This document shows positions 16,198-63,146 of a stretch of DNA of 64,000 nucleotides, in pieces. The notes beneath the pieces are model-generated. The model did no database searches, was not told where the DNA came from, and saw only the letters and a list, made by a program, of their open reading frames with translations. Made by a program: the position numbers and the translations under genes. The DNA lies in the IMG/VR virus record IMGVR_UViG_3300025770_000870, positions 1-64,000 of that record; one strand, 5' to 3'. Within the stretch, counting starts at the first letter, position 1, and each line of letters starts with the position of its first letter.

Positions 16198-17721
16198 TTA
16201 GTAAAATCTTATTAATTTTTTAATACTTCCATCTGAATATTGCTCAATAATAATACCTATATAATCATCATTAACTTCTTGTCCTAATAGATTAATAGAT
16301 CTAATCAATTCATTATCAATGTTAGTAGCATTGTATTGGATATCTGTAATTGTGTTTTTTAGTATAATATTAAACCTATGGTTATACCCTATGATATTAT
16401 TAATGAATGTATATGTTGGGTTTATTCCTGAATCATAAACAATACCAGTTAATATATCTTGGTAAAATACAGATTGTCCATTGAAATTAAGTTGACCAGA
16501 ACCTTTAACATACAAAGATGTTGTGTCTTTATCCTTTATAGTGTTTATGGAATATATATTAGTATCTATTTTTGTGTAAAGTTTTGATGATTGTGTGATA
16601 AATTTATGTGCGTCATAAGTATAATCATAAAAATTAGTAGAACCTGTATCTACAACAAATGCTATTTCATCTGAATTTAATGTTATTTTAGTAACTTTTG
16701 ATGTACCTAACCTTTTTAATTGGCTATTATCATTTACTATAACTTTTGATTTTGATTTCAGAGATGGGTTACTGATAATTGATTTAACCCAAAATGCTTG
16801 ACCAGATGATATAAACTCACTACCACCATTAACACCTACCCCGTTAATATAACTGGTGTAGTTTTTTGTACAAACGTCAAGTACCCAAATAGCATCTTCT
16901 ATATTTCTTTTCTTCCAGCCCTTTGCGTCCCAATTAATTGTACCTAACCAAGGATTTGAAACCATGTTCCAACCATTATTAACACTACTATCTAAACCAG
17001 AATATGTTATATTGTAATTAAAGTTTTCGGTTAAATCTGTTATACCAATAAGTTCAATAACTCTTGCGTCATTAGTTACTGATGAAGAAGAATCAAATAA
17101 AAAGAATCCTTGTCCCCTGTTGAGTATATCATTCACATTATTAGGAACAACCCACCCAATGTTTAAATCAACATCAGGTATTGTTTCGTCATAGAAATAG
17201 GTATTTACCCAAAATGTTGGCCAAGAAGTACCAGGAAAACCAGTGTGTATGAATCCTAAATCAACTAATGGGTTGTTAAATGGACTCCCATACATACCCC
17301 ATCCATCACATCGACTTATCCATTTCTGCCAAATTATATCACCGGTTATTGTTTTATTTTTTTTACACTTACCAATCCTTCCATTATTAATGGAATCATT
17401 TACTAACGTAAGTGGGGTATTTAAGATTAAATGATTTCCTATCTCAAGAACTCCGGTTACGTATAATGAATCATTACAAGTTGTTATCCCTTTTATGGTG
17501 ATATCATTTATAGTATCAATAATATCGAGTGTTACAAAATGTAGTATGATTACATTATCTCCTGTCGATGGTACACCTATATCCCAAGTAGTTGGGTCCG
17601 ACCAGACACCATTATTAATGGATGTTACTGTATTTTGTGATTTTAAAACTGGTGTTGATAATAATATTAATAATGTTGTTATCCAAAACAAGTGTTTGTT
17701 CAAAAATAAAAAATATTTCAT
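16198..17721 (-). CDS. Secreted Bacteroidota-type surface protein with T9SS-like C-terminus
   Basis: Signal peptide; GVWSDPTTW, GWNMVSNPW, GQAFWV; terminal INLLGQEV...YSDGSIKK. Confidence 0.7.
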   Translation of the reverse strand: MKYFLFLNKHLFWITTLLILLSTPVLKSQNTVTSINNGVWSDPTTWDIGVPSTGDNVIILHFVTLDIIDTINDITIKGITTCNDSLYVTGVLEIGNHLILNTPLTLVNDSINNGRIGKCKKNKTITGDIIWQKWISRCDGWGMYGSPFNNPLVDLGFIHTGFPGTSWPTFWVNTYFYDETIPDVDLNIGWVVPNNVNDILNRGQGFFLFDSSSSVTNDARVIELIGITDLTENFNYNITYSGLDSSVNNGWNMVSNPWLGTINWDAKGWKKRNIEDAIWVLDVCTKNYTSYINGVGVNGGSEFISSGQAFWVKSIISNPSLKSKSKVIVNDNSQLKRLGTSKVTKITLNSDEIAFVVDTGSTNFYDYTYDAHKFITQSSKLYTKIDTNIYSINTIKDKDTTSLYVKGSGQLNFNGQSVFYQDILTGIVYDSGINPTYTFINNIIGYNHRFNIILKNTITDIQYNATNIDNELIRSINLLGQEVNDDYIGIIIEQYSDGSIKKLIRFY

Positions 17722-17825
17722 ATTTTATATATAGATTAAATAATATACTTTTTTATTCAAAAATTTATATAAAGTTGTTTGTTTTATTTAATATTTAATA
17801 TATACACTATAAAGTAAATAATATT

Positions 17826-19070
17826 ATGGCAAGAAAGATAATATACAGAGAAAATGGATTAACTGGATCCAATAATACCCCAGGTGGTTATAAATATCTT
17901 GGTTATGATGGGTTAGTTTTATCAGAGAAAACAGGAGCAACTATAAGTGCAATTGGTGGAGGTGATTACTTACCTCTTAGTGGCGGAACGATGTCTGGGA
18001 ATATCGTCTTCGGATCGGCTGAAACTCAAATATCTAACGCCGGAGGTTACCTTACGTTAGAAGGATCTGCAGGAGGTAGAGGTACTATAATAACATTACC
18101 AAATGATTCAGGTATAGTAATGAGTGATTCTGCTGTTAGATTCACTGCTGGTCTTGCTGCTGCAAATCTTCAATTTAACATATTAACAAATACAGGTGGA
18201 TCAGCTAATGAGAAATTAAAAATAGAAGCAAAAGCAGCAACTAACTTTTTTGGTTATCTCAACTTTCCTGAAGTAACTGCGGAAAGAAATTGGTATTTAC
18301 CAAATGCTACTGGAACGATTGCTTTAACTAATCAACTACCAAATATATCTGGAACTGATAAGCATTTCCTACAATATAACACATCAGTCTTACCGACTGG
18401 ACTAATAGATTCTCCTCTGTCAATAGAACCAGGAGCTGGCTTTCCTCCAGACTACCATATTTTAAGTTGGAAACCTGGAGATGGGTCGATTGGAGAAGAT
18501 GCACCAATTTTTAAAGTTGAAAATTTTGCAGGTACTTCAAGATGGTTAACGATTGCTAGTAGTGGTCAAGGATCTCTTGAATGGAATAATGCAAGTTTCT
18601 ATGGTGGTATTTATATCAATTCAAATATCACATTAACAGGAAATAGAATTTGGGATATGCCCGATGCAAGTGGAACTGTTGCTTTAACACAGAACCAAGG
18701 GTATGATAATTTTATAGAAGTTTCAATATCTTCGGCTGAAATATTATCTCTTTCTACTACACCAAAGGATGTACTTCCAGTACTAACCGGATCTGATTAT
18801 TACGATTATAAAGTAATTTTCGAATACACTTATGGTACAACTCCATATAATAATGGAGGAGGAGGAAGCTTCTTAATAGTAGATAATCTCGGTAGAGGAT
18901 TAACAACCATGGAAAATTTAAATGCTGTTACTTACAGTTTCGCTAGTAATTACACATATGGGTCTAGGGTAAGACCAGCAACTGGGTTATCTTGTTCTAT
19001 TGTGTCTCCCACAACTTTAGGAGACGGTACTGTTAATTTGAAAGTATATTATACAACTCATACTCTTTAA
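17826..19070 (+). CDS. Putative tail-fibre/virion structural protein
   Basis: YLPLSGGTMSG and two R-x-W-x-(L/M)P(N/D)A(T/S)GT(I/V)ALT repeats typical of fibre proteins; TAATATATA at 17796. Confidence 0.55.
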   Translation: MARKIIYRENGLTGSNNTPGGYKYLGYDGLVLSEKTGATISAIGGGDYLPLSGGTMSGNIVFGSAETQISNAGGYLTLEGSAGGRGTIITLPNDSGIVMSDSAVRFTAGLAAANLQFNILTNTGGSANEKLKIEAKAATNFFGYLNFPEVTAERNWYLPNATGTIALTNQLPNISGTDKHFLQYNTSVLPTGLIDSPLSIEPGAGFPPDYHILSWKPGDGSIGEDAPIFKVENFAGTSRWLTIASSGQGSLEWNNASFYGGIYINSNITLTGNRIWDMPDASGTVALTQNQGYDNFIEVSISSAEILSLSTTPKDVLPVLTGSDYYDYKVIFEYTYGTTPYNNGGGGSFLIVDNLGRGLTTMENLNAVTYSFASNYTYGSRVRPATGLSCSIVSPTTLGDGTVNLKVYYTTHTL

Positions 19071-19074
19071 TCTA

Positions 19075-23894: not shown

Positions 23895-24107
23895 TTAGTT
23901 TAGTGTGTCTCCAATATCATACTTATCAATATCTGAAAACAATTTTTCGTGTCCATTCTTATCAGCATAAGTGTACTCTACCCACTCACTATTATATCTT
24001 GATTTATCCACTATGATAAATGGTTTCTCATAAACGGTTGGTTCACAACTGGTCAGTAATAAAATGGCTAATAAGGATAATATTAATAATATAATTGTTC
24101 TTTTCAT
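23895..24107 (-). CDS. Small lipoprotein
   Basis: Signal peptide with lipobox LTSC. Confidence 0.7.
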   Translation of the reverse strand: MKRTIILLILSLLAILLLTSCEPTVYEKPFIIVDKSRYNSEWVEYTYADKNGHEKLFSDIDKYDIGDTLN

Positions 24108-26265: not shown

Positions 26266-27924
26266 TTACACTTTTGTTGGAGCGTATTTAATTAAAAGTT
26301 CTTGTTTCTTTTCCAGAATAAAATCACTAGCTGGGTAGTTATGATTAGATGATGTTTTAAGGGTTAGAGGCATCTTTTTCATTTGATCCTTTATTCTGTT
26401 CTTAATAACGATGAAATCATCGTCCTGTCCTTCTCCAAATGGTTTATAAATATTCTCACCATTGAAATAGTTAATCATCATATCAACACCATCTTCGGTA
26501 TTAAATACAATTGTTTGTTTGTTGTGCAAAGCTTCTTTTGTTCTTAGTAATTTGAATGGTCCTGGTAATGTACCTTTACCTAAACTCTCACTAAACTTAA
26601 CAACTGGTTTGTCTTCGTGACCAACAGAAGACAATGCGTATTTAGCAGATAAGTTATCACGTTTCAAATCGTTACGTAATCCCCCACCTTGTCCGAACAA
26701 TCCCCAAGTGTAGAAAGCGTATCCATTATCAATTAAGAAATCCATTTCATCTAAAATGTCTTCGAAATTTTTACCATCACCATCTAAGAAGTGTAGTAAA
26801 GTACCACATTTCCAATTTCCTGTTTTGGTTTTCATTTCTGTATATAATCCAGATTCAACACCGATTTCACAAATTTCTAAAATTTGGTCTTTTGTTGTAT
26901 ATCCCTCTTTAGAAGAATCGGGTCTGGCGACAATTACTTTATTAGTACCTTCTGATTTACTTTTAAGTGCTAATGGTAATAGGTAGTTTCTAACTGCGAA
27001 TTTCGCGTCATAACAATCATCAACCATTGAGATAATCTCACCATCACCACAACTATCATAAATTGCTTTATAACAATCAAATTCTTTTTCGAATGATTGA
27101 ACATTTCGGTGTGCTAATGCGTTTACTGATGAAAATATTCCCTCTATTTCTCCAGAGTTTTTCCAAGCTTGATATGCTCCTGAGAACGTGTCAGTACCAG
27201 GGAATGTATATAAATGAACCATTCCTAATTCTTCTGATTCATTAGATGTCATACCAGCTCTGTCTCCAAAGTCAGTAATCATAATAGATGCGTAGAAGTT
27301 AAGATCAGCCTCAGACATATCTGGATCAACTCTTAAAATTCTTTCTTTGATTCTATTTAGAAAGTGTTCATCTTGTGTAACTCTTTCACTCTTTGACCAA
27401 ACTTGTAAAATTTTAGATTCAAACCAAGCTCCCAATACACCCATACCATCAACGGTTGATGTGATTTCGATTGCTGGTTCATTTGGATATAGAACAGAAC
27501 CTTCTTTGACTGCTCTAATCTGAATTGGTGGTCTACCGTTAAATTCATCAACGACTCTTCTCCAAATTTCTTCTGGAAATTCATATTCTCTAAATCCAGT
27601 GGTTGTTACTTTAGCGTGTGTTAAAAAACGTTTAGTTTCATCAATCTCATCATGTGTGATTGGTTCGTAGAACAACTCTTCTAGTATTCTTTGTAACCCA
27701 ATAAAGACAATTCTATTGTCTCCTTCTGAGAAGATAACTGGGTTAATTTTATTCAACTCTCTTCTGAAAGTTACGTAATAAACTGATTTTTCCTTTGCTT
27801 CAGGACTTTCAAATTTATTAGACCCTATTGTGTAGGCATCACCCAAGAGTAATCTTGGTGTTTTGTGTATTTTACGACCAGGTAAAACAACTTTTCTTTC
27901 TTTTACTTCTTCTTGTAAGTACAT
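26266..27924 (-). CDS. nadV: Nicotinamide phosphoribosyltransferase (NAMPT)
   Basis: LLGDAY, FIGLQ, DFGDRA, FPGTDT, ARPDS, GQGGGL, KYA motifs of the NAMPT family. Confidence 0.9.
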   Translation of the reverse strand: MYLQEEVKERKVVLPGRKIHKTPRLLLGDAYTIGSNKFESPEAKEKSVYYVTFRRELNKINPVIFSEGDNRIVFIGLQRILEELFYEPITHDEIDETKRFLTHAKVTTTGFREYEFPEEIWRRVVDEFNGRPPIQIRAVKEGSVLYPNEPAIEITSTVDGMGVLGAWFESKILQVWSKSERVTQDEHFLNRIKERILRVDPDMSEADLNFYASIMITDFGDRAGMTSNESEELGMVHLYTFPGTDTFSGAYQAWKNSGEIEGIFSSVNALAHRNVQSFEKEFDCYKAIYDSCGDGEIISMVDDCYDAKFAVRNYLLPLALKSKSEGTNKVIVARPDSSKEGYTTKDQILEICEIGVESGLYTEMKTKTGNWKCGTLLHFLDGDGKNFEDILDEMDFLIDNGYAFYTWGLFGQGGGLRNDLKRDNLSAKYALSSVGHEDKPVVKFSESLGKGTLPGPFKLLRTKEALHNKQTIVFNTEDGVDMMINYFNGENIYKPFGEGQDDDFIVIKNRIKDQMKKMPLTLKTSSNHNYPASDFILEKKQELLIKYAPTKV

Positions 27925-27938
27925 AGTATATGTTTTAG

Positions 27939-28943
27939 TTAGTTTCTATAGGAAAAGACTGTTTCAACCATTTCCCTTTCAAAATAATTTACCAAATTAG
28001 AGAAAAATTCTATATGTTCTTCTATAATAATTTTGGAGTATTGTTTTTTTGTTAATAGGTCATTAATAGGAACCCATTTAATTTCTTCTACATCATCCGA
28101 TGCTTTAGCGTGACCCCATTGTTTCTTATATAAGAATAGTGTACTAAATATTTCACTATCTTCGTTTTTATGTCTCCAATCTTTAATTTTACCGCTACAA
28201 ATATAAACACCATCAGTAGATATACCTACTTGTAAGTTTCCTCCGGTTTCCTCCCTTAGTTCCCTAAGACCAGCAGATTCATAATCTTTATCAGTAACAT
28301 CAACGTGTCCACCAATAAATCTGAATTTATCTTCTAAAGGTTTCCTCCCTAATAATATTGTATTATTTGTTTTATCCCAAACGACAACATCTACACAAGG
28401 CATTATTACAGGGTATCTTCCGAAGTTAGCGTAAACAACACCTTTTCTAAAATCTTCTGTGTGTCCTACTTCTCTAGCTACTTCTTCTCTTATCGAACTA
28501 CCAGAAATTTTATCTTGGTCATTATTGCCAATAAGTTCTACTGTTTTATATTTACCCTTATAAAATGGGATAAATGAATCTCTAGCACCATATAATAGTG
28601 TAGTTCTGTTTCCGAAAGGTTCTTGTATTTTACCATCTAAGATGGTTGACCAAGTCTCGTTGTTACGTTGGTCTCTGATTGGAAGTATTGTTACGTCAGG
28701 ATATTCTTGTTGTATCATTGATTTCCTTGTTGCGAAATCCAATGGGTTTCTTTTAGTTTGCTCCACAACTGGAACTCCTAAAAATATAATAACTTTTTTA
28801 TGATTTGCACAAACCGTATCAATTAAATGTTTATGAACATCGTGTAGCTTTGGTAATTGCATTCTAGCCACCAATACACCAACTTCAAAATCAGAAACAT
28901 TAATAACACTCGGTATGTTTAATTCTATCTTTTCTACCATCAT
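27939..28943 (-). CDS. nadM: Bifunctional NMN adenylyltransferase / Nudix ADP-ribose pyrophosphatase (NadM-Nudix, NatV-like)
   Basis: ARMQ...HDVH, RNPLDF..R, SGSSIRE; Nudix box GGHVD...RELREETG. Confidence 0.88.
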   Translation of the reverse strand: MMVEKIELNIPSVINVSDFEVGVLVARMQLPKLHDVHKHLIDTVCANHKKVIIFLGVPVVEQTKRNPLDFATRKSMIQQEYPDVTILPIRDQRNNETWSTILDGKIQEPFGNRTTLLYGARDSFIPFYKGKYKTVELIGNNDQDKISGSSIREEVAREVGHTEDFRKGVVYANFGRYPVIMPCVDVVVWDKTNNTILLGRKPLEDKFRFIGGHVDVTDKDYESAGLRELREETGGNLQVGISTDGVYICSGKIKDWRHKNEDSEIFSTLFLYKKQWGHAKASDDVEEIKWVPINDLLTKKQYSKIIIEEHIEFFSNLVNYFEREMVETVFSYRN

Positions 28944-41333: not shown

Positions 41334-42173
41334 ATGAAAATACACTGGGTTATAATATTACTATCTCTACTTAATTCTTGTAAATTAACCGATGTTGTTG
41401 AACATAATCAAGATACTGACATAGTTATTGAAGTTGTTGATACTACTCACGTAGAATTTCCTCCTTCGCCAATAATTACACTTGATACTATTAATGTATC
41501 AAATATTGAAGAATATATAGATTCTAAAGAAATTGAGGAGTATGTTTATGTCGAATATATCAAGTCTGTTATATTAGATATAGAAGACCAAACATCTGAT
41601 ACACCAAAGAATACTGAGGGTATGGTAGCATATTCTGTACCAAATGAGATGCAAGTGGGTAACCCATATACTATTAAGCTAAGAATAACTAAAATAAAGG
41701 ACAATTCATCTAAAATAGACCTTATACTTGGTGAAAGAAGTAATAATACGATATATGAAGGTGATGTTGATACAAAAGTCATTATAGAGAACATAAGAGT
41801 TGAATCTTTAATGTCAGCATCTTTAATAGGTGATGAAGAGAAGTTTTATATCAATGAGATGAGCACTAAGACACAGGTGTTAGAAGATTCATCATATACT
41901 GAATGGAGTTGGGTTGTTAATCCATTAAAGGGTGGAAACAATCATTTGAAGATGATTATAACGGTTGTTATCAACGATGATGGTTATTCTAAAGATATAG
42001 TTGTGTTTGATAAATCAATAGAGGTGAGGTCTAATATAAAGTTCTCTGTCAATACATGGTTCTCAAGTTATTGGCAATGGTTGATGACAACTATAATAAT
42101 ACCAATTACTATATGGATTTACAGAAAACGGAAAAAGAAAAGGGAAAGTAAAAACTTCACTATTGAATTATAA
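41334..42173 (+). CDS. Putative lipoprotein with C-terminal TM anchor
   Basis: LNSC lipobox; EWSWVVNP; C-terminal TM plus basic tail. Confidence 0.7.
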   Translation: MKIHWVIILLSLLNSCKLTDVVEHNQDTDIVIEVVDTTHVEFPPSPIITLDTINVSNIEEYIDSKEIEEYVYVEYIKSVILDIEDQTSDTPKNTEGMVAYSVPNEMQVGNPYTIKLRITKIKDNSSKIDLILGERSNNTIYEGDVDTKVIIENIRVESLMSASLIGDEEKFYINEMSTKTQVLEDSSYTEWSWVVNPLKGGNNHLKMIITVVINDDGYSKDIVVFDKSIEVRSNIKFSVNTWFSSYWQWLMTTIIIPITIWIYRKRKKKRESKNFTIEL

Positions 42174-44344: not shown

Positions 44345-45085
44345 TTATCTTCTTGATAACATAAATTTTCTACTTCTTCCACATGCTGAGTTAGCCATTG
44401 TAAATCCTAAGTCATAATTGAATTCCAATACGAACATAATTGTTACATCAGTAGTTTCGATTGGTCTATCATCCATTGCGTAAATATTACTTCCACTTAC
44501 TTTCGGTGAATTAGTTAAATCAGCAAAGTTGTATCTTAATCGAAATCCAGTTGATATACCCCAATTACCTACACCAAAAGCATAACCTCCTACTCCAAGC
44601 AAAAATCCCCGCCTCTTTGTATTGTATAGACTGGTATAATCAGTACTAACACCATTCAGTGTTTCTGTAACTGATTTCGTATTACCAAAGACAATTCCGG
44701 TTTCGATGTACGTGTCATTTTCTTTATTGAATCGTAACATCAATGGTATTTCACTTCCTATTGATTGTATTTCCAAACTATTACTATCAACTCTGTATAT
44801 CTGATTGTTTTTTGAATATAAATACTCAACTACGACTGCAAAGTTATCGTTGAAATTGAACGCAAACTTACCACCGGCATTTAATCTCATTGAATTAAGT
44901 TTATGTAAATAGGGTGTGCTTTCTGTATCGTTAAAAGGGGTTGATACCTCATTATTAAACCAACTCGGTCCAACTGATAATTTAGGCCCAAAGTCAATAA
45001 AGAATTTACTGTCTTTAAATAGTCCTTGTGTGAACCCTGTAATTGTTATTATTACAGCGATTAGAATTAATCCAATTTTCTTCAT
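44345..45085 (-). CDS. Outer-membrane beta-barrel protein (Bacteroidota porin/PorT-like)
   Basis: Signal peptide; alternating beta strands; EIPLMLRF. Confidence 0.7.
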   Translation of the reverse strand: MKKIGLILIAVIITITGFTQGLFKDSKFFIDFGPKLSVGPSWFNNEVSTPFNDTESTPYLHKLNSMRLNAGGKFAFNFNDNFAVVVEYLYSKNNQIYRVDSNSLEIQSIGSEIPLMLRFNKENDTYIETGIVFGNTKSVTETLNGVSTDYTSLYNTKRRGFLLGVGGYAFGVGNWGISTGFRLRYNFADLTNSPKVSGSNIYAMDDRPIETTDVTIMFVLEFNYDLGFTMANSACGRSRKFMLSRR

Positions 45086-47213: not shown

Positions 47214-47568
47214 AGTGGTTGTGTTTTAATGATTTATATATACTATAATATACGGATAATATACCAATTAACCTAATTTTATTAGTTTTAATTTAACTTT
47301 ATTTTCTTGTTATCTTTATAATCTAACATTATATAAATATAATAAAAAATACATTGAATTCCTAAATAATTTTTTATATAAAACTATAATATTGGTTTTA
47401 TCACGTTGTGAAAGAGAATGTCTGTGTTGGGAAAACCCACTAGGTAAAAGAATCTAAGTGTTTTCTACATGATTGGTGAAAACACGTATTTATTTTTTTA
47501 CGTGTTAAAAAACAGCACTTTTTGTGGTTATGTTAATATATAACATAACTAAAAACAACAAAAATATT

Positions 47569-48099
47569 ATGAAAACATTTATCAACAAATACACAATTAC
47601 TGCACTTTTAATTATCATAGGGTTTATAAACTTAAATTATGTGTCTTATCAATCAAATGCATTTGACTTATTAATGGATATAAACGAAAACAATGCCAAT
47701 TTATTAAACGATGGAGACCCAATACCTGGACTTGATTTTAGTGCAAGTTACAGAGTTACTGCCGTTAATAAAATTGATAATGATATTTGTAGTGTATCAA
47801 ATACCGTCAAAGTAAATCCAGGATTATATATGTACGTTCCAAACGCATTTACACCGAACGAAGACGGATTAAATGATTCATTTGGAGCACTTGGTTATGG
47901 TGTGAAAGAATATCACTTAATAATATATAACAGATGGGGACAATTAATATTTGAATCCGACAGACAAGATAATCAATGGGACGGTACGTATCACGGACAA
48001 AAAGCTCCGGTTGGAAGTTATGTGTACACTATTGATTCAACAGGGTATTATAATCAAGATTTCCATAAAGAAGGTATGGTGAGCATTATTAAAGTATAA
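47569..48099 (+). CDS. Protein with gliding-motility-associated C-terminal (CHU_C, T9SS type B) domain
   Basis: YVPNAFTPNEDGLNDSF, IYNRWGQLIFE, WDGTYHG...GSYVY. Confidence 0.9.
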   Translation: MKTFINKYTITALLIIIGFINLNYVSYQSNAFDLLMDINENNANLLNDGDPIPGLDFSASYRVTAVNKIDNDICSVSNTVKVNPGLYMYVPNAFTPNEDGLNDSFGALGYGVKEYHLIIYNRWGQLIFESDRQDNQWDGTYHGQKAPVGSYVYTIDSTGYYNQDFHKEGMVSIIKV

Positions 48100-49670: not shown

Positions 49671-49690
49671 AATTTTCCCATTAACTTATT

Positions 49691-50248
49691 TTAATTTTCC
49701 AAGAAATCCAAACATTTTTGATATAAGGTCTTGTTTCCTCTATTCATATATCTTAAAATATTTTCTTTTTCTTTTAGATAAACCTTTGCGAACTTTGGGT
49801 CATTTACAAGAACGTCTTTTCCGTTATCCAAAAGGTCAGCGTATTTAATTGTTTGAGCTTTAGGTGAGATTCTACCCATTCTAATGGCTTCCATTTCTTT
49901 TCTCCCAGATCTATTCATATCAGGATAACTTTCATGTGTAAAAATATCGGTAAGTTCCTTAACTAATCTAACAACAGCCATAGCAACACCTGGTTCAACA
50001 ATCACTAACATTTCGTTCAGTAATTCAGATTCAGTTGTTGGTGTATCTTCCAAAACATCATGTAGAATTGCCGCATAAACCATAGATTCATCACCTCCAT
50101 TTTCTTTTACGGTATCTGAAACTCTAAATGTGTGTGAAACATAAGGATCACCAGAATATTTTCTTTTTTGGTCACCGTGAAGCCTTGTTGCCAATTCTTT
50201 CACCTTTTCTATTATATCAAAGGACTTATGTGTTTTAACATATCTCAT
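49691..50248 (-). CDS. Stand-alone HD-domain (p)ppGpp hydrolase (Mesh1/SAH-like)
   Basis: HGDQKRKYSGDPYVSH, AAILHDVLEDT, IKYADLLDN. Confidence 0.88.
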   Translation of the reverse strand: MRYVKTHKSFDIIEKVKELATRLHGDQKRKYSGDPYVSHTFRVSDTVKENGGDESMVYAAILHDVLEDTPTTESELLNEMLVIVEPGVAMAVVRLVKELTDIFTHESYPDMNRSGRKEMEAIRMGRISPKAQTIKYADLLDNGKDVLVNDPKFAKVYLKEKENILRYMNRGNKTLYQKCLDFLEN

Positions 50249-50390
50249 TTTCTAAAATTTATTCTTATATTTTACCAAATCTATACAATGTATATATTAA
50301 ATATAAACTTTATTTATATAGTTAAATATTTAAAAGTATGAAATTTTTTGACAGTTTGTTATTTTATATATAAAAATAAAAAATATATCG

Positions 50391-50762
50391 GTGAAGAAAA
50401 TATTGATAATAGAAGATGATGTAGATATAAGAGATACTATTGCCTCCATTCTTACAGTTAGTTCTTTCGATGTTTATACTGCTGCTAATGGTAAATCTGG
50501 TGTTGAAATGGTGATGAGTAAAAAACCAAACCTTATAATTTGTGATGTTAACATGCCAATTATGAGTGGGTTTGGGGTATTATCAAAATTAAAAAAAGAA
50601 TTATCTGAAAATGATATGCCAATATTTTTATTTCTAACCGCTAGTATTGGTCAAGAAAATATTGATAAGGGTATGTGCCTCGGCGCTGATGGTTATATTT
50701 CGAAACCATTTAAGGTTTCTGAGTTATTGAACTCTATAAACAATAATTTTGAAAAAATATAA
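50391..50762 (+). CDS. Single-domain response regulator (receiver)
   Basis: ILIIEDD, ICDVNMP, FLTA, GADGYISKPF. Confidence 0.93.
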   Translation: MKKILIIEDDVDIRDTIASILTVSSFDVYTAANGKSGVEMVMSKKPNLIICDVNMPIMSGFGVLSKLKKELSENDMPIFLFLTASIGQENIDKGMCLGADGYISKPFKVSELLNSINNNFEKI

Positions 50763-50766
50763 ATAT

Positions 50767-51366
50767 TTAACAAAAAAGATTTTTATCTATTTTTTTATTT
50801 AATCTTCTCATAGCCCGTTTAATTCTTTGGTTACAAGTCCTAGGTGTTATGTCGTGTTTTTCCTCTATTTCTTTTTCGGTATACCCATAAACATATTTGT
50901 CTATAACCATCCTAACTTCTAGTGGATCTAACTCTTTATATAATAACCTAACTAATGTTATGAAAGGAACCTTATCGGTTTGATCATATGTTTTATCCTC
51001 AATGTCCCATTTACGTTGTGTTGAAATATCATCTATGCTTGTGGTGATAACCCTTTTCTTACGTCTATTTATTGATAAAATGTGGTTATTAAAACAATAT
51101 GTTAACCAAGAACCAAAAGAAGATTTCAATTTATCAAATTTCGATAAGTCCTTAGTTAAAATCCTAGTCAAAAATATCAACACTTCATCTTCCATCTCTT
51201 CCTTAGATAGATTAACTAGAGTTGTGTTTTTAATTTTGTTGTATAATATAGGTTTAAACTTATTGAATAACCTAGTGATAGATTTTTGGTCACCTTTTTT
51301 AGATTTTTCAACAAATAGATTTGTTTCATCAATAGTAAAATAAAAAAATTTATTTAAAATAATCAT
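50767..51366 (-). CDS. Sigma-70/ECF-like RNA polymerase sigma factor
   Basis: KGDQKSITRLF, FDKLKSSFGSWL (region 2), GYTEKEIEE...RIKRA (region 4 HTH). Confidence 0.75.
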   Translation of the reverse strand: MIILNKFFYFTIDETNLFVEKSKKGDQKSITRLFNKFKPILYNKIKNTTLVNLSKEEMEDEVLIFLTRILTKDLSKFDKLKSSFGSWLTYCFNNHILSINRRKKRVITTSIDDISTQRKWDIEDKTYDQTDKVPFITLVRLLYKELDPLEVRMVIDKYVYGYTEKEIEEKHDITPRTCNQRIKRAMRRLNKKIDKNLFC

Positions 51367-52424: not shown

Positions 52425-52754
52425 TTATTGTCCTATTGTTATTGTAATTCCTACTATTAATAGACTTGATCCTGTTATCACAGCTAATAAATGCGCTGGT
52501 TGTTTGTATATTGGTCTTTGTTGATATTTTCCATTTACAAATTCACCTTCATTGGGTGTTGCCAACCCTAGTAATGTAAACATCCCACCAGCAACCATTA
52601 AAGCATATCCAGAATGGACATCCATTTGTCTGTGAGTTGTTTTTTGTTGAAGGTGTAAATTTACGTTATAAAGATTGTCCGGAAGTTCCTCTTTAGACAT
52701 TTGAGCCATTGTGAGTAATGGTAAGAACATTAATATACATAATATTTTTTTCAT
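52425..52754 (-). CDS. Membrane protein with signal peptide
   Basis: Signal peptide plus two TM segments. Confidence 0.7.
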   Translation of the reverse strand: MKKILCILMFLPLLTMAQMSKEELPDNLYNVNLHLQQKTTHRQMDVHSGYALMVAGGMFTLLGLATPNEGEFVNGKYQQRPIYKQPAHLLAVITGSSLLIVGITITIGQ

Positions 52755-53734
52755 TTGAGTTGTTTTTTAAATTGACGACCACCTATTTGACCAAGTGGAT
52801 TAAAATATACATAGTTTGGTTCATGTAGTCCTTTGGTAGGAACCGTAACTTCGATAATATCAAACTCTTCTTCATTTCCATCATAATCAATTTGTCGGAG
52901 CATATAGTAATTAGTTTGTGATTCGGGTCGATGACTTGATTGATATTTAATGGTAGTGTTACTGTTTCCAGCACCATTCTTTCTTTCTATTATTTCCCAT
53001 ATTCTACCATCTTCTGAATGTAGAATTTCAAACTTATCGTTATTAATTTCACTAGCGGTTATCCAAGTTAATACAACTATATTGTTATCTTCATTATAAG
53101 CACCATACCAATTAGTTAATGCTATTGGTAATGTACCATTCGGAGCGTCAAATGAAAAAGAAGTAATATCATAATAATAAACTAGAACTTGTCTAGGGTT
53201 TCCTCCAACATAAGAGTTAGAAATGTCAACAGGAGTCTGAAATGGCCCTCCTTGATTATAACTCCAAGAACTAAGATTAGAACGATACCAAATAACAAAT
53301 GTAGGGTCCGTTATTAATTGAAATCTAACTTGAGTTGTTGTATTGGGTACCCTTGTGTCAACTACACCAGAGAATCCTGCTGTATATGTAGCGTCATTAA
53401 CCCAAGCTCCTTGGTCAAAATAATCAAATGTCATGAAATCCCAACCATTTTCAATATATCCTGATAAAGGATATGATACATCTACATTACCTATAACATT
53501 GGAAAAGTCTAGTATTGGACTCATTATGGTAATCGTATCGTTATTTAGGTAAGGTGTACTTCCCAAATTAAAACTTGCGTAATTTTCAGTTCCACCATAA
53601 TTCTGTGTTCCGGATCCATTATCAGCGGTCCATTCACCAACCCCATTAAAGGAATCAAACTCTTCAATTAAGGGGTATTGAGCAAACACAATGTTTACCC
53701 ATAATATTAGTAATATGTTAATAATGTGTTTCAT
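52751..53734 (-). CDS. Secreted Bacteroidota-type protein (LPI-x-L / W.TASE.NND module)
   Basis: Signal peptide; LPIALTNW, WITASEINNDKFEI, YYMLRQIDYDG. Confidence 0.8.
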   Translation of the reverse strand: MKHIINILLILWVNIVFAQYPLIEEFDSFNGVGEWTADNGSGTQNYGGTENYASFNLGSTPYLNNDTITIMSPILDFSNVIGNVDVSYPLSGYIENGWDFMTFDYFDQGAWVNDATYTAGFSGVVDTRVPNTTTQVRFQLITDPTFVIWYRSNLSSWSYNQGGPFQTPVDISNSYVGGNPRQVLVYYYDITSFSFDAPNGTLPIALTNWYGAYNEDNNIVVLTWITASEINNDKFEILHSEDGRIWEIIERKNGAGNSNTTIKYQSSHRPESQTNYYMLRQIDYDGNEEEFDIIEVTVPTKGLHEPNYVYFNPLGQIGGRQFKKQLK

Positions 53735-58444: not shown

Positions 58445-58913
58445 AATATTTTCGGTTTCAATGGTTACTTTTACTTGAACTGGTAATGTTATAAGGTATA
58501 GTTGAGGTGTTTTATTAAAACCTCATTAGTGATTAAACTATTTTGAATAATTATTCAGTTCAATTTCCGGTAAATTCCACAACTTTAAGGTATCACCTTC
58601 TTTTAAATCTTTATCAGATTTAATTAATCGGAATTCTTTTGTTTTTGCATTTTCAAGATGGTAAATATTAATTTTAAGTTTTTGTACAACCACATATTTA
58701 GATACGCATCCAAATAAAGAACATATAAAAAATGATATTATGGTGACTTTCATTATAATTACATTCATTATGTATATATTATACACACCAATCCGAAAAT
58801 ATTTTAATTAATTTATAACTTGTATCTTTTTAGTTTCGGTAATATCACCTTGTGATATAATAAATATCAGTACAAAATTCTTGAACTTATTTTATTATTC
58901 TTATATAAAAACT

Positions 58914-59876: not shown

Positions 59877-60194
59877 ATGGAATATAGAATAAAAGAAGAA
59901 TTTAACAAATTTTACCCACAGGTAAAGATTATTAAAAATAGAAGTTTTTTCACCAGAACTTATTTGTTTCTGAAAAACATTGGGAAACGATCCCTGAGTA
60001 CACCCAAGACTAAAGAATGGGTTCATATGAATGTTAGTACAAATAAAAGATCACTCATTCGGAACCGGTATGTAGTTTTTAGTACTTTAAGAGAATCTAA
60101 ATTATACATACTATCTTTAGATAAAGGTGTAGTGTATCATAAGTGGTATGAAAAAAAAAGATTAAGTAATCATGAATATAGAGGTATTAAATAA
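59877..60194 (+). CDS. Hypothetical phage protein
   Basis: YRIKEE..KFYPQ. Confidence 0.65.
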   Translation: MEYRIKEEFNKFYPQVKIIKNRSFFTRTYLFLKNIGKRSLSTPKTKEWVHMNVSTNKRSLIRNRYVVFSTLRESKLYILSLDKGVVYHKWYEKKRLSNHEYRGIK

Positions 60195-61380
60195 CGTATC
60201 AGATAGACTAAATAGGCTATCTGAGTCAGCAACTATTGCGATGGCTAGAAAGGCTACAGAGCTAAAGTCACAAGGAGTAGATGTGATTAGTTTGAGTTTA
60301 GGAGAACCTGATTTTTTCACTCCTGATTTTATCAAAAAAGCTGCTTTCGAAGGTATAGAACAAAATTATTCTAAATATACTCCTGTGAATGGTTATTTAG
60401 ATTTACGAGAGGCGATAAGTAATAAATTTAAAAGAGATAACAATTTAAATTACCAACCAAGTCAGATTGTAGTTTCTAACGGGGCTAAGCAATCCATATC
60501 AAATGTTGTGATGAGTATTGTTAATCCGGGAGATGAGGTAATAATCCCAGCGCCATATTGGGTTACTTATGTAGAAATTGTGAAAATGGCAGAAGGAATA
60601 CCTGTTATCATTGAAACTTCTATTGATAATGATTTTAAGATAACTCCTCAGGAATTATCCGATGCTATTACCGATAAAACAAGGATGATGATTTATAGCT
60701 CGCCTTGTAATCCAACAGGAACAGTATATAATAGACAAGAGTTAGAATCTATTTCCGAAGTTATTGCAAATCATCCACAAGTGATAGTGATAAGTGATGA
60801 AATTTACGAACATATTAATTTTGTTGGACACCACACTTCTTTAGGTGAATTTCAAAATGTTTATGATCAAGTTGTAACTGTTAATGGTGTATCAAAAGCT
60901 TTTGCGATGACGGGGTGGAGATTGGGTTATATAGGAGCACCTGAATGGATAGCTAATGCTTGTACTAAAATACAAGGTCAGTTTACCTCTGGTCCATCTA
61001 GTATATCACAGCGTGCTGCTATTGCAGCTGTGAATGCAGATCCAAGCGTAACTCATAATATGCGTGAATCATTTAGATCAAGAAGAGAGTTAGTTTTAAC
61101 AGAGTTAAATAAAATACCCGGTATAAAATCCAATATACCCGAAGGTGCTTTTTATGTTTTCCCGGATATTAGCTTTTTCTTTGGTAAATCAGATGGTGAA
61201 TTTATGGTTAATAATGCGGATGATTTAAGTTTATACATTTTAAATAAAGTAAATGTTGCGTTGGTTACTGGATCAGCATTTGGTGATCCAAAATGTTTGC
61301 GTATATCATATGCGGCAAGTGAGAATGAATTAAGAAAAGCTTTAAAAAGAATTGAAGAGGCATTATTATTACTTAGATAA
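60172..61380 (+). CDS. aspC: Aspartate aminotransferase (PLP class I/II)
   Basis: GEPDF, NGAKQ, SPCNPTG, SDEIY, SKAFAMTGWRLGY. Confidence 0.93.
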   Translation: MNIEVLNNVSDRLNRLSESATIAMARKATELKSQGVDVISLSLGEPDFFTPDFIKKAAFEGIEQNYSKYTPVNGYLDLREAISNKFKRDNNLNYQPSQIVVSNGAKQSISNVVMSIVNPGDEVIIPAPYWVTYVEIVKMAEGIPVIIETSIDNDFKITPQELSDAITDKTRMMIYSSPCNPTGTVYNRQELESISEVIANHPQVIVISDEIYEHINFVGHHTSLGEFQNVYDQVVTVNGVSKAFAMTGWRLGYIGAPEWIANACTKIQGQFTSGPSSISQRAAIAAVNADPSVTHNMRESFRSRRELVLTELNKIPGIKSNIPEGAFYVFPDISFFFGKSDGEFMVNNADDLSLYILNKVNVALVTGSAFGDPKCLRISYAASENELRKALKRIEEALLLLR

Positions 61381-61574
61381 TAATAAAAATAATTTTATTT
61401 TTTATCATATAGTACTTAATAAGACTATGTATAAAGGGAAATAATGAAAACAAAGAATCAATTTATAATATATAATATATGAAGCGCCCCGTATTTGATC
61501 CAAATATTTAATGTAATATTGGATCTTATATATCTACACAATAACTATTATTGTGGAAAATAACAAATAATACC

Positions 61575-63146
61575 ATGGAAAATAAAAAAAGATTTAGTTT
61601 TAAAACTTTATTACTGATAATGATGACCTTCGTATTTAGTGGTCACGTTTACGCACAACCAACAACATTAATGCCAGTAGATGGGTTATGGTATACCTGG
61701 ACTACTGATGATGGAATATTATATGATGACGGAGACTTCGGTGGTGATTATACAAATGATGGATTAGGGACTTTAACAATATACCCTACCGACCAAGCTA
61801 ATGACAAAATATATTTACAATTCGTTGAGTTTAGAATAGAAAATCAAGCAACGTGTAGTTATGACTATTTAGAAATTTATGATGGAGATGATTTATCTAA
61901 TCTAATTGGAAAGTATTGTGGTACAACATCACCAAACTCTGTACAATCAACTCATTCAACTGGAGCTGTAACATTGGTTTGGTCATCTGATATTTCGGTA
62001 GTTGATGCCGGATTTGAAATTGATGTAAGTGTAGTGTCACCAGCAACAACAGTGCAGTTAGGTGATCCAAACTCAACTACCACTGATGGAAGAGTCCCAG
62101 CATATGGGTATTATGACTATTCATGGTCAGCATTAATATATGGAGCAGCTGAGGTAGGTGTACCGATTATCATAGATGAAATACAATTTGATGTTGATAA
62201 CAATATCAATACAACTATGAATAATCAAAAGATTTTCATGGCCCATACAACCATGAATACGTTTCCTAATGGAAGCGAACCGGTAGATGGAGATATTGAA
62301 ATATCTGATTGGACATTAGTTTATACTGGAGATATAACTTGGACCCATGGATGGAATTCAATACCGTTAGACGCTACATTTATGTATAATGGACTCGGAA
62401 ACTTACTTATTAAAACAATTAATGAACATGGGTCATGGACTTTTGATTATCCTGAATTTAGGTACACTGCAAAAGCTAACACAGTAGTATATAATTATGC
62501 TGACGGTGGAATGCCTGGCCCATTAGGTTGGAGAAATAACCTCAGACCTAATATGAGGCTTGGGTTTGGTGGCGGTGGTGGTTCACTACCAATTGAATTA
62601 TTATCCTTTGGTGTTGAGTCTAACGATGCAAATGATGTGGTGGTTGAATGGACTACAGCATCACAGAGCAACAATGACTACTTTACAGTTCAACGAAGTG
62701 TTGATGGATATGAGTGGGAGGAAGTAACTAAAATCACTGGTTGTGGTAACTGTAATAGTCAGATAGATTACACATATTTAGACAGGAATCCATATACTGG
62801 CGTTTCATATTATAGATTGATGCAAACAGATTATGATGGAGTATTTGAAATATTTGCACCACAGTCCGTTACTATCGCAAACAATCAAACAATAGGATTA
62901 CATATTATACCTAATCCTGCAATAGATAACATCCAATTAGAGTTAGTATATCCAGATCCATTACATCGAGACTATAATCATGATGTACGAATATACAATT
63001 CTGATGGAGTAGAAGTTTATAAGAAGTTTTATATGGGTGAGTTAGAGGATTTTAACATTGATATTAAGAAACTTAAAACTGGATATTATATCATAAACAC
63101 TAAAGGCGATCGAGTTAAAGGTACTGGAAAGTTTATAAAAGAATAG
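61575..63146 (+). CDS. Secreted CUB-domain protein with T9SS type A sorting domain
   Basis: Signal peptide; CSYDYLEIYDG...GKYCG (CUB); LPIELLSF; IPNPA...GYYII C-terminal domain. Confidence 0.85.
   Translation: MENKKRFSFKTLLLIMMTFVFSGHVYAQPTTLMPVDGLWYTWTTDDGILYDDGDFGGDYTNDGLGTLTIYPTDQANDKIYLQFVEFRIENQATCSYDYLEIYDGDDLSNLIGKYCGTTSPNSVQSTHSTGAVTLVWSSDISVVDAGFEIDVSVVSPATTVQLGDPNSTTTDGRVPAYGYYDYSWSALIYGAAEVGVPIIIDEIQFDVDNNINTTMNNQKIFMAHTTMNTFPNGSEPVDGDIEISDWTLVYTGDITWTHGWNSIPLDATFMYNGLGNLLIKTINEHGSWTFDYPEFRYTAKANTVVYNYADGGMPGPLGWRNNLRPNMRLGFGGGGGSLPIELLSFGVESNDANDVVVEWTTASQSNNDYFTVQRSVDGYEWEEVTKITGCGNCNSQIDYTYLDRNPYTGVSYYRLMQTDYDGVFEIFAPQSVTIANNQTIGLHIIPNPAIDNIQLELVYPDPLHRDYNHDVRIYNSDGVEVYKKFYMGELEDFNIDIKKLKTGYYIINTKGDRVKGTGKFIKE

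What the first reader, a model, noticed from the sequence alone, without database searches (positions are those of the whole stretch)
16198..63146. Phage-borne clients of the host type IX secretion system and envelope proteins
Seen: signal-peptide proteins with T9SS type A-like (61575, weaker at 16198), type B CHU_C (47569) or associated modules (52751), plus a beta-barrel OMP (44345), lipoproteins and a secreted HMA protein. Several sit behind TAATATATA. Inference: the infected cell surface is remodelled through the host T9SS (adhesion, receptor masking, grazing defence).
Basis: partly seen in the sequence, partly recalled or inferred. Interest (0 to 1): 0.6.

Follow-up and report, generated by a model that had tools for sequence, protein, structure and literature searches.

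The report
Megaphage genes for host-secreted surface proteins
A fragment of a very large marine phage of Bacteroidota carries two genuine substrates of the host type IX secretion system, plus several other exported envelope proteins. This is a further example, with some new twists, of a phage trick first reported in 2020, and no function has been shown.

Summary

**Viral context.** The contig is viral. It has a tail sheath, a head protease and a major head protein. The capsid is 78% identical to that of the 635-kb uncultured phage LR745206, and 160 kb is collinear with that phage.

**T9SS sorting domains.** Two genes pass the curated HMM cut-offs:
- 61575-63146: signal peptide + CUB + type A CTD.
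- 47569-48099: signal peptide + short linker + type B CTD.

Two other genes are related to T9SS cargo but keep only a remnant of the type A CTD. They hit no CTD model:
- 16198-17721 keeps about 33 aa.
- 52751-53734 keeps about 10 aa.

**Other claims.**
- The "OMP" at 44345 is only weakly supported.
- The secreted HMA protein is supported by its Pfam match and signal peptide.
- The lipoproteins rest on lipobox-like N-termini only.
- TAATATATA is a general phage promoter-like motif in front of about 70 genes. It is not specific to secreted proteins.

**Evidence for function in phages.**
- The CUB-CTD gene belongs to a large family (≥20 clusters at 57-82% identity). The two contexts checked are phage-like.
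- In that family the signal peptide and CTD are conserved, and the CTD has even been swapped.
- Exported proteins follow the Bacteroidetes Q-rule.
- No phage PorP/SprF shuttle exists, so host machinery would have to be used.

**Limits.** Surface remodelling is plausible but untested. The source is marine, so the host is probably not Flavobacterium itself. Phage-encoded T9SS cargo was already reported by Bellas et al. 2020.

The parts
61575..63146 (+). Secreted modular protein (523 aa). It has a signal peptide (cleavage ...VYA|Q), a CUB domain (~61797-62021), an unassigned middle domain, an Fn3/Ig-like 'LPIEL...YYRL.Q.D.DG' module (~62583-62894) and a type A T9SS CTD (62904-63137).
   Evidence: PF00431 scores 54.5 bits. 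PF18962 scores 31.4 bits (cut-off 27) and TIGR04183 scores 26.3 bits (cut-off 23). Homologues begin at the ATG at 61575. At least 20 clusters at 57-82% identity keep the signal peptide, CUB and CTD.
47569..48099 (+). Small protein (176 aa). It has an N-terminal signal peptide or anchor, a ~60-aa linker and a type B T9SS CTD (47836-48078). It carries almost no cargo.
   Evidence: PF13585 scores 70.8 bits (cut-off 27) and TIGR04131 scores 58.4 bits (cut-off 35). TAATATATA at 47534-47542 lies 26 nt upstream of this ATG and inside the longer ORF, which favours 47569 as the start. It aligns with the CTD-only proteins of relatives W01 and W02.
16198..17721 (-). Exported adhesin-like protein (507 aa). 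It has a signal peptide (...LKS|Q), a beta-solenoid N-terminal domain, beta-rich domains and a 33-aa truncated remnant of a type A CTD (16201-16299).
   Evidence: It hits no CTD HMM. Its passenger is 27-28% identical (pairwise E 3e-19 and 3e-15) to bacterial Por_Secre_tail proteins P0036 and P0037. Alignment A1 shows the first CTD strands and one internal segment deleted. The AF2 model has pLDDT 76.7, and residues 28-134 match beta-helix adhesins at Z 6-7. About 32 homologue clusters exist; the one context checked is phage-like.
52751..53734 (-). Exported two-domain binding protein (327 aa). It has a signal peptide (...VFA|Q), a jelly-roll (CBM/MAM/cleaved-adhesin-like) domain, an Fn3/Ig-like module (~52844-53131) and a ~10-aa CTD stub (YFNPLGQ).
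   Evidence: It has no Pfam or NCBIfam hit. The AF2 model has pLDDT 81.8. Foldseek matches the sugar-binding plus Ig domains of glycoside hydrolases and the Kgp K1 cleaved-adhesin domain. Only the module is shared with bacterial PF18962 proteins. The context of homologue P0060 is phage-like.
52425..52754 (-). Small exported or membrane protein (109 aa; ...TMA|Q). Its start overlaps the stop of the 52751 gene by 4 nt.
   Evidence: ORF layout and N-terminal and C-terminal hydrophobic segments. No family was found.
44345..45085 (-). Putative outer-membrane beta-barrel protein (246 aa; ...GFT|Q).
   Evidence: OMP_b-brl scores only 16.9 bits against a 28.7-bit cut-off. There is no NCBIfam hit. ESM Atlas feature score is 0.97 to Bacteroidota OMP_b-brl_2 clusters. 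It was not folded.
13364..13696 (-). Exported heavy-metal-associated (CopZ/MerP-like) protein (110 aa; ...INA|Q).
   Evidence: PF00403 scores 44.3 bits. CopZ and MerP models match below their family cut-offs. TAATATATA lies 4 nt upstream.
41334..42173 (+). Putative lipoprotein (279 aa; LLNSC). Further lipobox-like ORFs are at 23895-24107(-) and 32707-32997(-). The one at 58538-58768(-) was judged by eye only.
   Evidence: Signal peptide plus lipobox pattern. There is no family hit, except N-terminal similarity to lipoprotein signal peptides. The 23895 protein is 71% identical to a W01 ORF.
47534..47542 (+). One example of the TAATATATA promoter-like motif. There are 33 in the window and 103 in the record.
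   Evidence: Enriched 33 against 9.0 +/- 2.8 expected. Seventy of the 103 lie 0-40 nt upstream of an ORF start, with modes at 4-7 nt and 19-29 nt. There is no enrichment at secreted-protein genes.

Best explanation
The window is the variable accessory arm of a fragment (about one third) of a ~630-kb marine megaphage that infects a T9SS-bearing member of the Bacteroidota. In this arm the phage carries a set of Sec-exported envelope proteins.

Two of them are true T9SS substrates. The first is a CUB-domain binding protein with a type A CTD. By analogy with bacterial type A cargo, the PorV shuttle would carry it to the SprA translocon. It would then be released or linked to the surface. The second is a nearly cargo-less protein with a type B CTD. 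It must dock on a host PorP/SprF-like shuttle or anchor, because the phage encodes none.

Two further families (16198 and 52751) descend from T9SS cargo architectures but have lost most of the CTD. They probably stop in the periplasm or outer membrane, or use another route.

All four passengers are non-enzymatic binding modules (CUB, jelly-roll, beta-solenoid, Fn3-like). The most likely role is therefore to change what the infected cell's surface binds or displays. That could mean adhesion, or occupancy or masking of surface sites, including exclusion of further phage.

Shown: domain identities, viral context, conservation, and absence of phage shuttles. Inferred: actual secretion, localisation and benefit.
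For: - Viral context and megaphage kinship.
- CTD HMM matches above the curated cut-offs.
- Signal peptides that follow the Bacteroidetes Q-rule: 15 of 31 hydrophobic N-termini against a 9% background (rule from PMC5837995).
- The CUB-CTD family is widespread and both contexts checked are phage-like. Mean column conservation is 0.73 in the CTD and 0.82-0.83 in the CUB and middle domains. Two members carry a different, swapped CTD, so a CTD is retained by selection.
- GTDB bacterial genomes share only the CUB domain at 34-44% identity, so this is not a recent host pick-up.
- All five related megaphages have type A hits (four above the cut-off). The two closest have four type B CTDs each.
- PorP/SprF is absent from six phage records but is found 6-17 times in each of five Bacteroidota genomes.
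- Fold evidence for binding modules.
- Type B CTD proteins need PorP/SprF-like partners (PMC9143113, PMC12618676).
Against: - There is no expression or secretion evidence. No RNA run holds the region.
- The host is unknown.
- The type A CTD scores are only just above the cut-offs.
- CTDs can be species-specific (PMC11285876), so function cannot be assumed.
- Two of the four proposed clients have no valid CTD.
- Signal peptides were judged by a hydrophobicity and Q-rule heuristic, not by a trained predictor.
- The genes are scattered among unrelated genes and share no specific regulation.
Confidence: 0.55

Rival explanations
1. T9SS interference. The small, nearly cargo-less CTD proteins act as decoys. 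These are 47569 here and the 107-136-aa signal peptide + CTD proteins of related megaphages. They would occupy host PorP/SprF or PorV shuttles, so host adhesins such as SprB-like phage receptors would no longer be displayed. That would give superinfection exclusion or arrest of gliding.
For: - The 47569 protein is a signal peptide, ~60 aa and a type B CTD.
- W02 and W01 encode proteins of 116 and ~107 aa in which the type B CTD follows the signal peptide directly.
- Type B ORFs of <= 200 aa make up 3/9 in the phages against 6/120 in five Bacteroidota genomes, p = 0.016.
- The phages have no shuttle of their own.
- Loss of gliding or T9SS genes gives phage resistance in Flavobacterium (PMC9804748).
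Against: - Small type B CTD proteins also exist in bacteria, so they need not be inhibitors.
- The numbers are small.
- No binding or competition was tested.
- The larger CUB-CTD protein does not fit a decoy role.
Confidence: 0.15
2. Virion decoration. The Ig-like, CUB and jelly-roll proteins are parts of the phage particle, such as adhesins on the capsid or fibres. The 'CTD' would then be just another Ig-like fold, not a secretion signal.
For: - Ig-like and CBM-like modules are common on virions (general knowledge).
- The 16198 gene sits next to 17826-19070. The first 46 residues of that protein are 70% identical to a W01 ORF, and by eye its sequence looks like a tail fibre.
- The beta-solenoid of 16198 also resembles tail-fibre tips at Z ~6.
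Against: - All candidates have N-terminal signal peptides with Q-rule cleavage sites, conserved across homologues. That is unexpected for proteins assembled in the cytoplasm.
- None matches a PHROG structural family.
- They lie in the variable arm, not in the collinear structural region.
Confidence: 0.1
3. Neutral baggage. These are decaying fragments of host surface-protein genes picked up in a recombination-prone arm, with no role in infection.
For: - The window is the flexible arm. Only 21/123 of its ORFs have a W01 counterpart, against 189/234 elsewhere.
- Two families show truncated CTDs.
Against: - There are intact ORFs, with dozens of homologue clusters at 40-94% identity, in the phage-like contexts checked.
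- The signal peptide and CTD motifs are conserved.
- The same short C-terminal element is conserved in two unrelated passenger families.
- No close bacterial full-length homologue exists.
- The region is identical in contigs from four independent runs.
Confidence: 0.1
4. The contig is cellular (a bacterial or plasmid fragment), so these are ordinary host T9SS cargo.
For: Many host-like genes are present. They include a TonB-dependent receptor, an aminotransferase, PurA and a fatty-acid desaturase.
Against: - Tail sheath, head protease and major head protein are present.
- The capsid is 78% identical to that of a 635-kb phage genome, and 160 kb is collinear with it.
- IMG/VR lists it as a virus record.
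Confidence: 0.02

Closest known systems
'Cryophage' T9SS cargo genes (Bellas et al. 2020, Nat Commun 11:4403; PMC7468147)
   Same: It is an uncultured phage of Bacteroidota whose variable genes encode proteins with T9SS type A sorting domains. The authors interpreted this as hijacking of the host T9SS to alter the infected cell surface or secretome. As here, the genes sit in the flexible part of the genome.
   Different: - The Cryophage cargo are enzymes or PA14 proteins (an endoglucanase, a GH39 and a PA14 protein), all type A. Here the passengers are non-enzymatic binding modules.
- One CTD here is type B, with no cognate shuttle.
- Two families here have truncated CTDs.
- The carrier here is a marine megaphage of the LR745206 / Lak-related capsid lineage.
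Bacterial T9SS type A cargo (Por_Secre_tail, PF18962/TIGR04183), such as RgpB, ChiA and the Sediminibacterium protein P0037
   Same: They share a Sec signal peptide with a Q-rule cleavage site, a modular passenger, an Fn3/Ig-like module and a C-terminal ~80-aa CTD with the PNPa, G.Y and K-rich terminal motifs.
   Different: - These are encoded by a virus.
- GTDB representative genomes hold no full-length bacterial homologue; only the CUB domain matches.
- The 16198 and 52751 relatives keep only 10-33 aa of the 7-stranded sandwich, which is considered essential (PMC11285876).
Bacterial T9SS type B cargo with PorP/SprF shuttles (SprB/SprF, PG1035/PorP; PMC9143113, PMC12618676)
   Same: The C-terminal CHU_C / TIGR04131 domain has the PNAFTPNGDG.ND, YNRWG and WDG motifs.
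   Different: - No adjacent PorP/SprF gene exists, nor any other in the phage record.
- The protein is tiny (176 aa), whereas most type B ORFs in the five bacterial genomes sampled are far longer.
Q-rule signal-peptide proteins of Porphyromonas gingivalis phages (Matrishin et al. 2023; PMC10367356)
   Same: They are phage-encoded exported proteins whose predicted signal-peptide cleavage exposes an N-terminal glutamine. The authors took this as adaptation to Bacteroidota secretion and as potential to modify the outer membrane.
   Different: No T9SS sorting domains were reported there (the paper has no mention of T9SS). Those are temperate phages of an oral pathogen, not marine megaphages.

Membership tests
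T9SS type A cargo (Por_Secre_tail) | C-terminal ~70-100-aa CTD that matches PF18962/TIGR04183 above the curated cut-off and ends at the protein's C-terminus | tested here: met
   For 61575-63146: PF18962 scores 31.4 bits (cut-off 27), residues 452-529 of the 531-aa reading from 61551 (444-521 of the 523-aa protein). TIGR04183 scores 26.3 bits (cut-off 23).
T9SS type A cargo (Por_Secre_tail) | The same CTD criterion, applied to 16198-17721 and 52751-53734 | tested here: not met
   There is no hit, even at E <= 1. Alignments show only a 33-aa remnant (16198) and a ~10-aa remnant (52751) of the CTD.
T9SS type A cargo (Por_Secre_tail) | N-terminal Sec signal peptide | tested here: met
   There is a hydrophobic N-terminus with a K/R n-region and an ...A|Q cleavage motif, conserved in 19 homologues. 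This is a heuristic test, not a trained predictor.
T9SS type A cargo (Por_Secre_tail) | Secretion depends on the T9SS (SprA/PorV), and the CTD is removed by PorU | not testable with these tools
   This needs a host or a surrogate flavobacterium and T9SS mutants.
T9SS type B cargo (CHU_C / Bac_Flav_CTERM) | C-terminal domain that matches PF13585/TIGR04131 above the cut-off | tested here: met
   For 47569-48099: 70.8 bits (cut-off 27) and 58.4 bits (cut-off 35).
T9SS type B cargo (CHU_C / Bac_Flav_CTERM) | A cognate PorP/SprF-like shuttle, usually encoded next to the cargo gene | tested here: not met
   PF11751 gives no match in G000 at E <= 10, nor in five related megaphages at E <= 0.1. The same search finds 6-17 copies in each of five Bacteroidota genomes. 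The protein is therefore an 'orphan' that would need a host shuttle, like the three orphan substrates of F. johnsoniae (PMC12618676).
T9SS type B cargo (CHU_C / Bac_Flav_CTERM) | The five conserved motifs A-E required for secretion (PMC12618676) | tested here: inconclusive
   PNAFTPN.DG.ND, YNRWG and WDGTY are present and shared with the phage CTD-only proteins. The published motif definitions are in a figure that was not available, so the mapping is incomplete.
Outer-membrane beta-barrel (OMP_b-brl / OMP_b-brl_2, PorT-like) | Pfam match above the gathering score; barrel fold | tested here: inconclusive
   For 44345-45085: PF13505 scores 16.9 bits against a 28.7-bit cut-off. There is no NCBIfam hit. 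The ESM Atlas feature score is 0.97 to OMP_b-brl_2 clusters.
Heavy-metal-associated domain proteins (HMA; CopZ/MerP-like) | PF00403 above the cut-off, with a metal-binding CxxC | tested here: met
   For 13364-13696: PF00403 scores 44.3 bits (cut-off 24.8). A GSC..C motif is visible in the N-terminal sequence. No equivalog cut-off (CopZ, MerP) is reached.
Megaphages of the LR745206 / Lak-related capsid lineage | Related major capsid protein, and genome collinearity with a complete member | tested here: met
   The capsid protein is 78%, 73%, 53% and 52% identical to those of uncultured phages of 635, 642, 636 and 735 kb, and 30% identical to Prevotella Lak phages. G000 80-242 kb is collinear with LR745206 28-238 kb at a mean 71% aa identity.

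The most novel reading that the evidence does not exclude
Megaphages of marine Bacteroidota keep a flexible arsenal aimed at the host T9SS itself.
- Signal peptide + CTD-only mini-proteins (type A and type B) would jam or retarget the PorV and PorP/SprF shuttles.
- A conserved ~33-aa 'mini-CTD' ([YI]N.LGQ.V...Y.G..I..Y.DGS..KK) is shared by two unrelated phage passenger families. It would act as a new minimal sorting or anchoring tag.

If so, the phage reprogrammes which proteins reach the cell surface, rather than merely adding a few.
Probability: 0.12. Interest if true: 0.8.

Novelty: new variant of a known kind. Interest (0 to 1): 0.5.

Why it matters
The T9SS builds the surface coat, the adhesins and the gliding machinery of Bacteroidota, and that surface is what phages and grazers meet.

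If very large marine phages routinely send their own binding proteins through the T9SS, infected cells ("virocells") would differ from uninfected ones in adhesion, particle attachment and phage susceptibility. The same would follow if the phages block the T9SS with decoys.

The conserved phage CTDs would also be natural probes of what a minimal T9SS signal is. They would help test how orphan type B substrates choose a shuttle, which is a question now under study in F. johnsoniae.

As it stands, the result extends a 2020 observation to another phage lineage and to type B signals. It does not establish function.

Tried and rejected
- **PHROGs scan** of ten window proteins, including all T9SS candidates: no family for any of them.
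- **Foldseek against the PDB** with the full 507-aa 16198 model: nothing below E 1e-3. VIA-align gave only Z 6-7 beta-helix matches for residues 28-134.
- **Mini-CTD HMM** against all six-frame ORFs: one copy in G000, which is a seed member, and one in W01. It is therefore not a widespread tag within one genome.
- **Phage-encoded PorP/SprF shuttle:** absent.
- **Neighbours of the 16198 homologue P0012:** not homologous to the tail-fibre-like 17826 protein, so there is no conserved pair.
- **Host identification** with the genome-contig scan: only CUB-domain matches, spread over many Bacteroidota orders. No host was assigned.
- **RNA evidence:** no RNA run holds the region. The contigs laid from four DNA runs show presence only.
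- **Literature searches** for 'T9SS + huge phages', 'Por_Secre_tail + phage', 'CHU_C + phage' and a broad T9SS/phage query gave no further prior report. The library is incomplete.

Full report
**Context**

The window is the first 64 kb of a 241,918-bp IMG/VR virus record. The record is linear, and CheckV estimates 89% completeness. GC content is about 29%.

PHROGs identifies three structural genes outside the window:
- a tail sheath at 167973-171905(-);
- a head maturation protease at 198213-200354(+);
- a major head protein at 200440-202170(+).

The head protein is 78% and 73% identical to those of uncultured phages LR745206 (635 kb) and LR756502 (642 kb). It is 53% and 52% identical to those of 636-kb and 735-kb phages, and 30% identical to those of Prevotella Lak phages.

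I fetched LR745206 (W01) in full. G000 80-242 kb is collinear with W01 28-238 kb at a mean 71% amino-acid identity. The record is therefore about one third of a ~630-kb megaphage, not a nearly complete genome.

The window itself is the non-collinear, variable arm. Only 21 of its 123 ORFs have a W01 counterpart, against 189 of 234 ORFs elsewhere.

Twenty public runs from 15 studies hold the 44-54 kb stretch at near identity. All are seawater or marine metagenomes, and none is RNA. Contigs from four of these runs match exactly.

**The claimed T9SS clients**

*61575-63146(+).* This gene passes both curated type A models: PF18962 at 31.4 bits (cut-off 27) and TIGR04183 at 26.3 bits (cut-off 23). 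The match lies at the extreme C-terminus. The protein also has a CUB domain at 54.5 bits.

*47569-48099(+).* This gene passes both type B models comfortably: PF13585 at 70.8 bits and TIGR04131 at 58.4 bits. Six-frame scans find no other CTD in the 242 kb.

*16198-17721(-).* This gene matches no CTD model, even at E <= 1.
- It has about 32 full-length homologue clusters at 45-54% identity. The one context checked is phage-like.
- Two distant bacterial homologues are Por_Secre_tail proteins, one of them from Sediminibacterium. They align over the passenger at 27-28% identity (pairwise E 3e-19 and 3e-15).
- In the joint alignment the phage family lacks the first CTD strands and one internal segment. 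About 33 residues remain (...INLLGQEVNDDYIGIIIEQYSDGSIKKLIRFY), and many members are shorter still.

*52751-53734(-).* This gene has no family hit.
- Its ~95-aa module (LPIEL...W.TASEINND.F.I..S.DG..W...GAGNS...NYYRL.Q.D.DG) is shared with the 61575 protein and with many bacterial PF18962 proteins.
- After that module only 'YFNPLGQ...' remains.
- Some members of the 52751 family end in the same short element as the 16198 family, for example ...IINILGQEVDDSYVGVKIYYFTDGSFIKKM. A conserved 'mini-CTD' is thus attached to two unrelated passengers.

The canonical type A CTD is a 7-stranded 3+4 sandwich whose architecture is considered essential (PMC11285876). I therefore do not count these two proteins as T9SS substrates.

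**What the passengers are**

- The AF2 model of the 52751 protein has pLDDT 81.8. It is a jelly-roll plus an Ig/Fn3-like sandwich. It matches the sugar-binding and Ig domains of GH2 and GH85 enzymes, and the Kgp K1 cleaved-adhesin domain.
- ESM Atlas look-alikes of the 52751 protein are viral clusters, some with MAM domains, and bacterial Por_Secre_tail and choice-of-anchor J proteins.
- The AF2 model of the 16198 protein has pLDDT 76.7. It begins with a small beta-solenoid like those of autotransporter, adhesin and tail-fibre tips, but only at Z 6-7.
- None of the four proteins has a catalytic domain. They look like binding modules.

**Evidence that secretion matters to the phage**

The CUB-CTD protein has 1,483 relatives at E <= 1e-3.
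- At least 20 clusters at 57-82% identity keep the signal peptide, CUB and PF18962.
- Other clusters carry MAM in place of CUB, or lack a recognised CTD.
- Two contexts that I inspected are phage-like, one of them on a 268-kb contig.

Within the family, mean column conservation is 0.73 in the CTD and 0.82-0.83 in the CUB and middle domains. The signal peptide always ends ...A|Q. Two members carry a different CTD on the same passenger, so the CTD was replaced rather than lost.

In GTDB representative genomes only the CUB domain finds matches. These are 34-44% identical and almost all in Bacteroidota. The architecture is therefore a phage family, not a recent host capture.

Across the record, 15 of 31 proteins with a hydrophobic N-terminus have [ASGTY]Q directly after the h-region, against a 9% background. 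This is the Bacteroidetes Q-rule for signal peptidase I substrates (PMC5837995). It ties the exported proteins to a Bacteroidota host.

All five related megaphages have type A hits, four of them above the cut-off. The two closest relatives have four type B CTDs each.

**Type B specifics**

Type B cargo bind PorP/SprF-like outer-membrane proteins, and they need a specific shuttle for secretion (PMC9143113, PMC12618676).
- PF11751 finds nothing in G000 or in the five relatives.
- The same search finds 6-17 copies in each of five Bacteroidota genomes.
- The phage protein is therefore an orphan that must use a host shuttle.

It is also almost cargo-less, with a signal peptide, ~60 aa and then the CTD.
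- W02 and W01 encode proteins of 116 and ~107 aa in which the type B CTD follows the signal peptide directly. W04 and W01 encode similar small type A proteins.
- Type B ORFs of <= 200 aa make up 3 of 9 in the phages, against 6 of 120 in five bacterial genomes (p = 0.016).
- This motivates the decoy hypothesis, but small type B proteins are not unique to phages.

**Other envelope proteins**

- The HMA protein is confirmed.
- The 44345 'OMP' is only weakly supported.
- Three ORFs have a lipobox-like N-terminus by the script. A fourth, 58538-58768(-), has one by eye only.
- Signal-peptide-like N-termini are enriched in the window, at 20/123 against 11/235 (p = 5e-4).
- Outside the window the record encodes four more relevant proteins: a TonB-dependent receptor (Plug plus barrel), a DUF2490/KdgM-like barrel, a secreted endonuclease/exonuclease/phosphatase-family protein and an M50 protease.

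**The motif**

TAATATATA occurs 33 times in the window, against 9.0 +/- 2.8 expected, and 103 times in the record. Seventy copies lie 0-40 nt upstream of an ORF start, with modes at 4-7 nt and 19-29 nt. They stand in front of genes of all kinds, including large genes in the structural region. Genes for secreted proteins are not enriched: 4/16 against 67/342, p = 0.53. It is a general promoter-like element of this phage.

**Comparison with what is known**

- Bellas et al. 2020 (PMC7468147) described three variable genes with type A sorting domains in 'Cryophage'. [quoted passage not shown]
- Matrishin et al. 2023 (PMC10367356) noted Q-rule signal-peptide proteins in Porphyromonas phages.

Four things are new here:
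- the carrier, a marine megaphage lineage;
- a type B CTD without a shuttle;
- small CTD-only proteins;
- the truncated mini-CTD shared by two families.

I found no report of type B CTDs in phages. The library is incomplete, so this is not proof of absence.

**Verdict**

I rate it a new variant of a known kind, of moderate interest.

Confidence is about 0.55 that the two CTD proteins are exported through the host Sec and T9SS pathways to act at the surface of the infected cell. Confidence in any specific benefit is much lower.

All reading frames were read with table 11.

Noticed in passing
whole record G000 (window = 1-64000): CheckV's 89% completeness is misleading. G000 80-242 kb is collinear with LR745206 28-238 kb (635 kb in total) at a mean 71% aa identity, and the contig ends in mid-synteny. 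The record is therefore about one third of a ~630-kb megaphage. The first ~80 kb is a variable arm with few shared genes.
   Followed up: yes
window, 33 sites (e.g. 8224, 13701, 22114/22129, 41304/41321, 45320, 47534); 103 in G000: TAATATATA sits at two preferred distances from start codons, 4-7 nt and 19-29 nt. It often occurs back to back between divergent genes. The 4-7 nt class would give leaderless or nearly leaderless mRNAs if the motif is a -10-like element. The temporal class is unknown.
   Followed up: partly
G000:143631-145613(-), 100333-100950(+), 89601-90332(-), 88012-88626(-): The phage encodes a full TonB-dependent receptor (Plug plus barrel, 660 aa, Q-rule signal peptide). It also encodes a DUF2490/KdgM-like small barrel, a secreted endonuclease/exonuclease/phosphatase-family protein and an M50 membrane protease. 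These add further envelope functions outside the window.
   Followed up: partly
window 48870-51366(-): Three genes lie together between the type B CTD gene and the 52751 gene. They are a PrsW-family intramembrane protease (73.9 bits), an HD_4 (RelA/SpoT-type HD) protein and a protein with sigma-70 region 4_2. PrsW is the site-1 protease of an anti-sigma factor in Bacillus, so this could be a phage envelope-stress or sigma module.
   Followed up: no
window 6286-7392(+), 26266-28943(-), 33024-34025(-), 35562-36353(+), 60172-61380(+): These are auxiliary metabolic genes: a fatty-acid desaturase (membrane lipid remodelling), NAMPT plus a NUDIX protein (NAD salvage), adenylosuccinate synthetase, a QueC-like protein and a class I/II aminotransferase. 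The aminotransferase lies directly upstream of the CUB-CTD gene.
   Followed up: no
window 45334-46752(+): This 472-aa protein has a C-terminal third made of CxxCxGxG-like repeats (CDCDGRGE..., DnaJ-type zinc-finger-like). It gives a weak hit to crAss tail ring protein 2 (19.8 bits, below the cut-off). A 37%-identical homologue exists in LR745206.
   Followed up: no
L023:11536-11919 and L024:11566-11946 (homologue contigs): In two other phage contigs the CUB-CTD gene is followed directly, with overlap, by a 126-127-aa SiaC-family (PF09345) gene. The ORFs downstream of 63146 in the window were not tested for this.
   Followed up: no
P0110, P0112 (homologues of the 61575 protein): Two family members keep the passenger but carry a clearly different type A CTD (…MNIYPNPVNKG…SGTYLVVATSENLL.SKKI.IK). 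This is a CTD swap, perhaps adaptation to another host's T9SS.
   Followed up: partly
L015:9460-10731 (neighbour of the 16198 homologue P0012): The gene next to the 16198-family gene in a related phage contig also encodes a protein with the 'EINNDYF...NYYRLKQTDYNG' module. Secreted-protein genes may therefore cluster in relatives.
   Followed up: no
window 17826-19070(+): This 414-aa protein is divergently transcribed from the 16198 gene. Its N-terminus looks like a tail fibre (…YLPLSGGTMSGNI…). Only its first 46 residues (70% identical) match LR745206, which suggests a conserved attachment stub with a variable distal part.
   Followed up: partly
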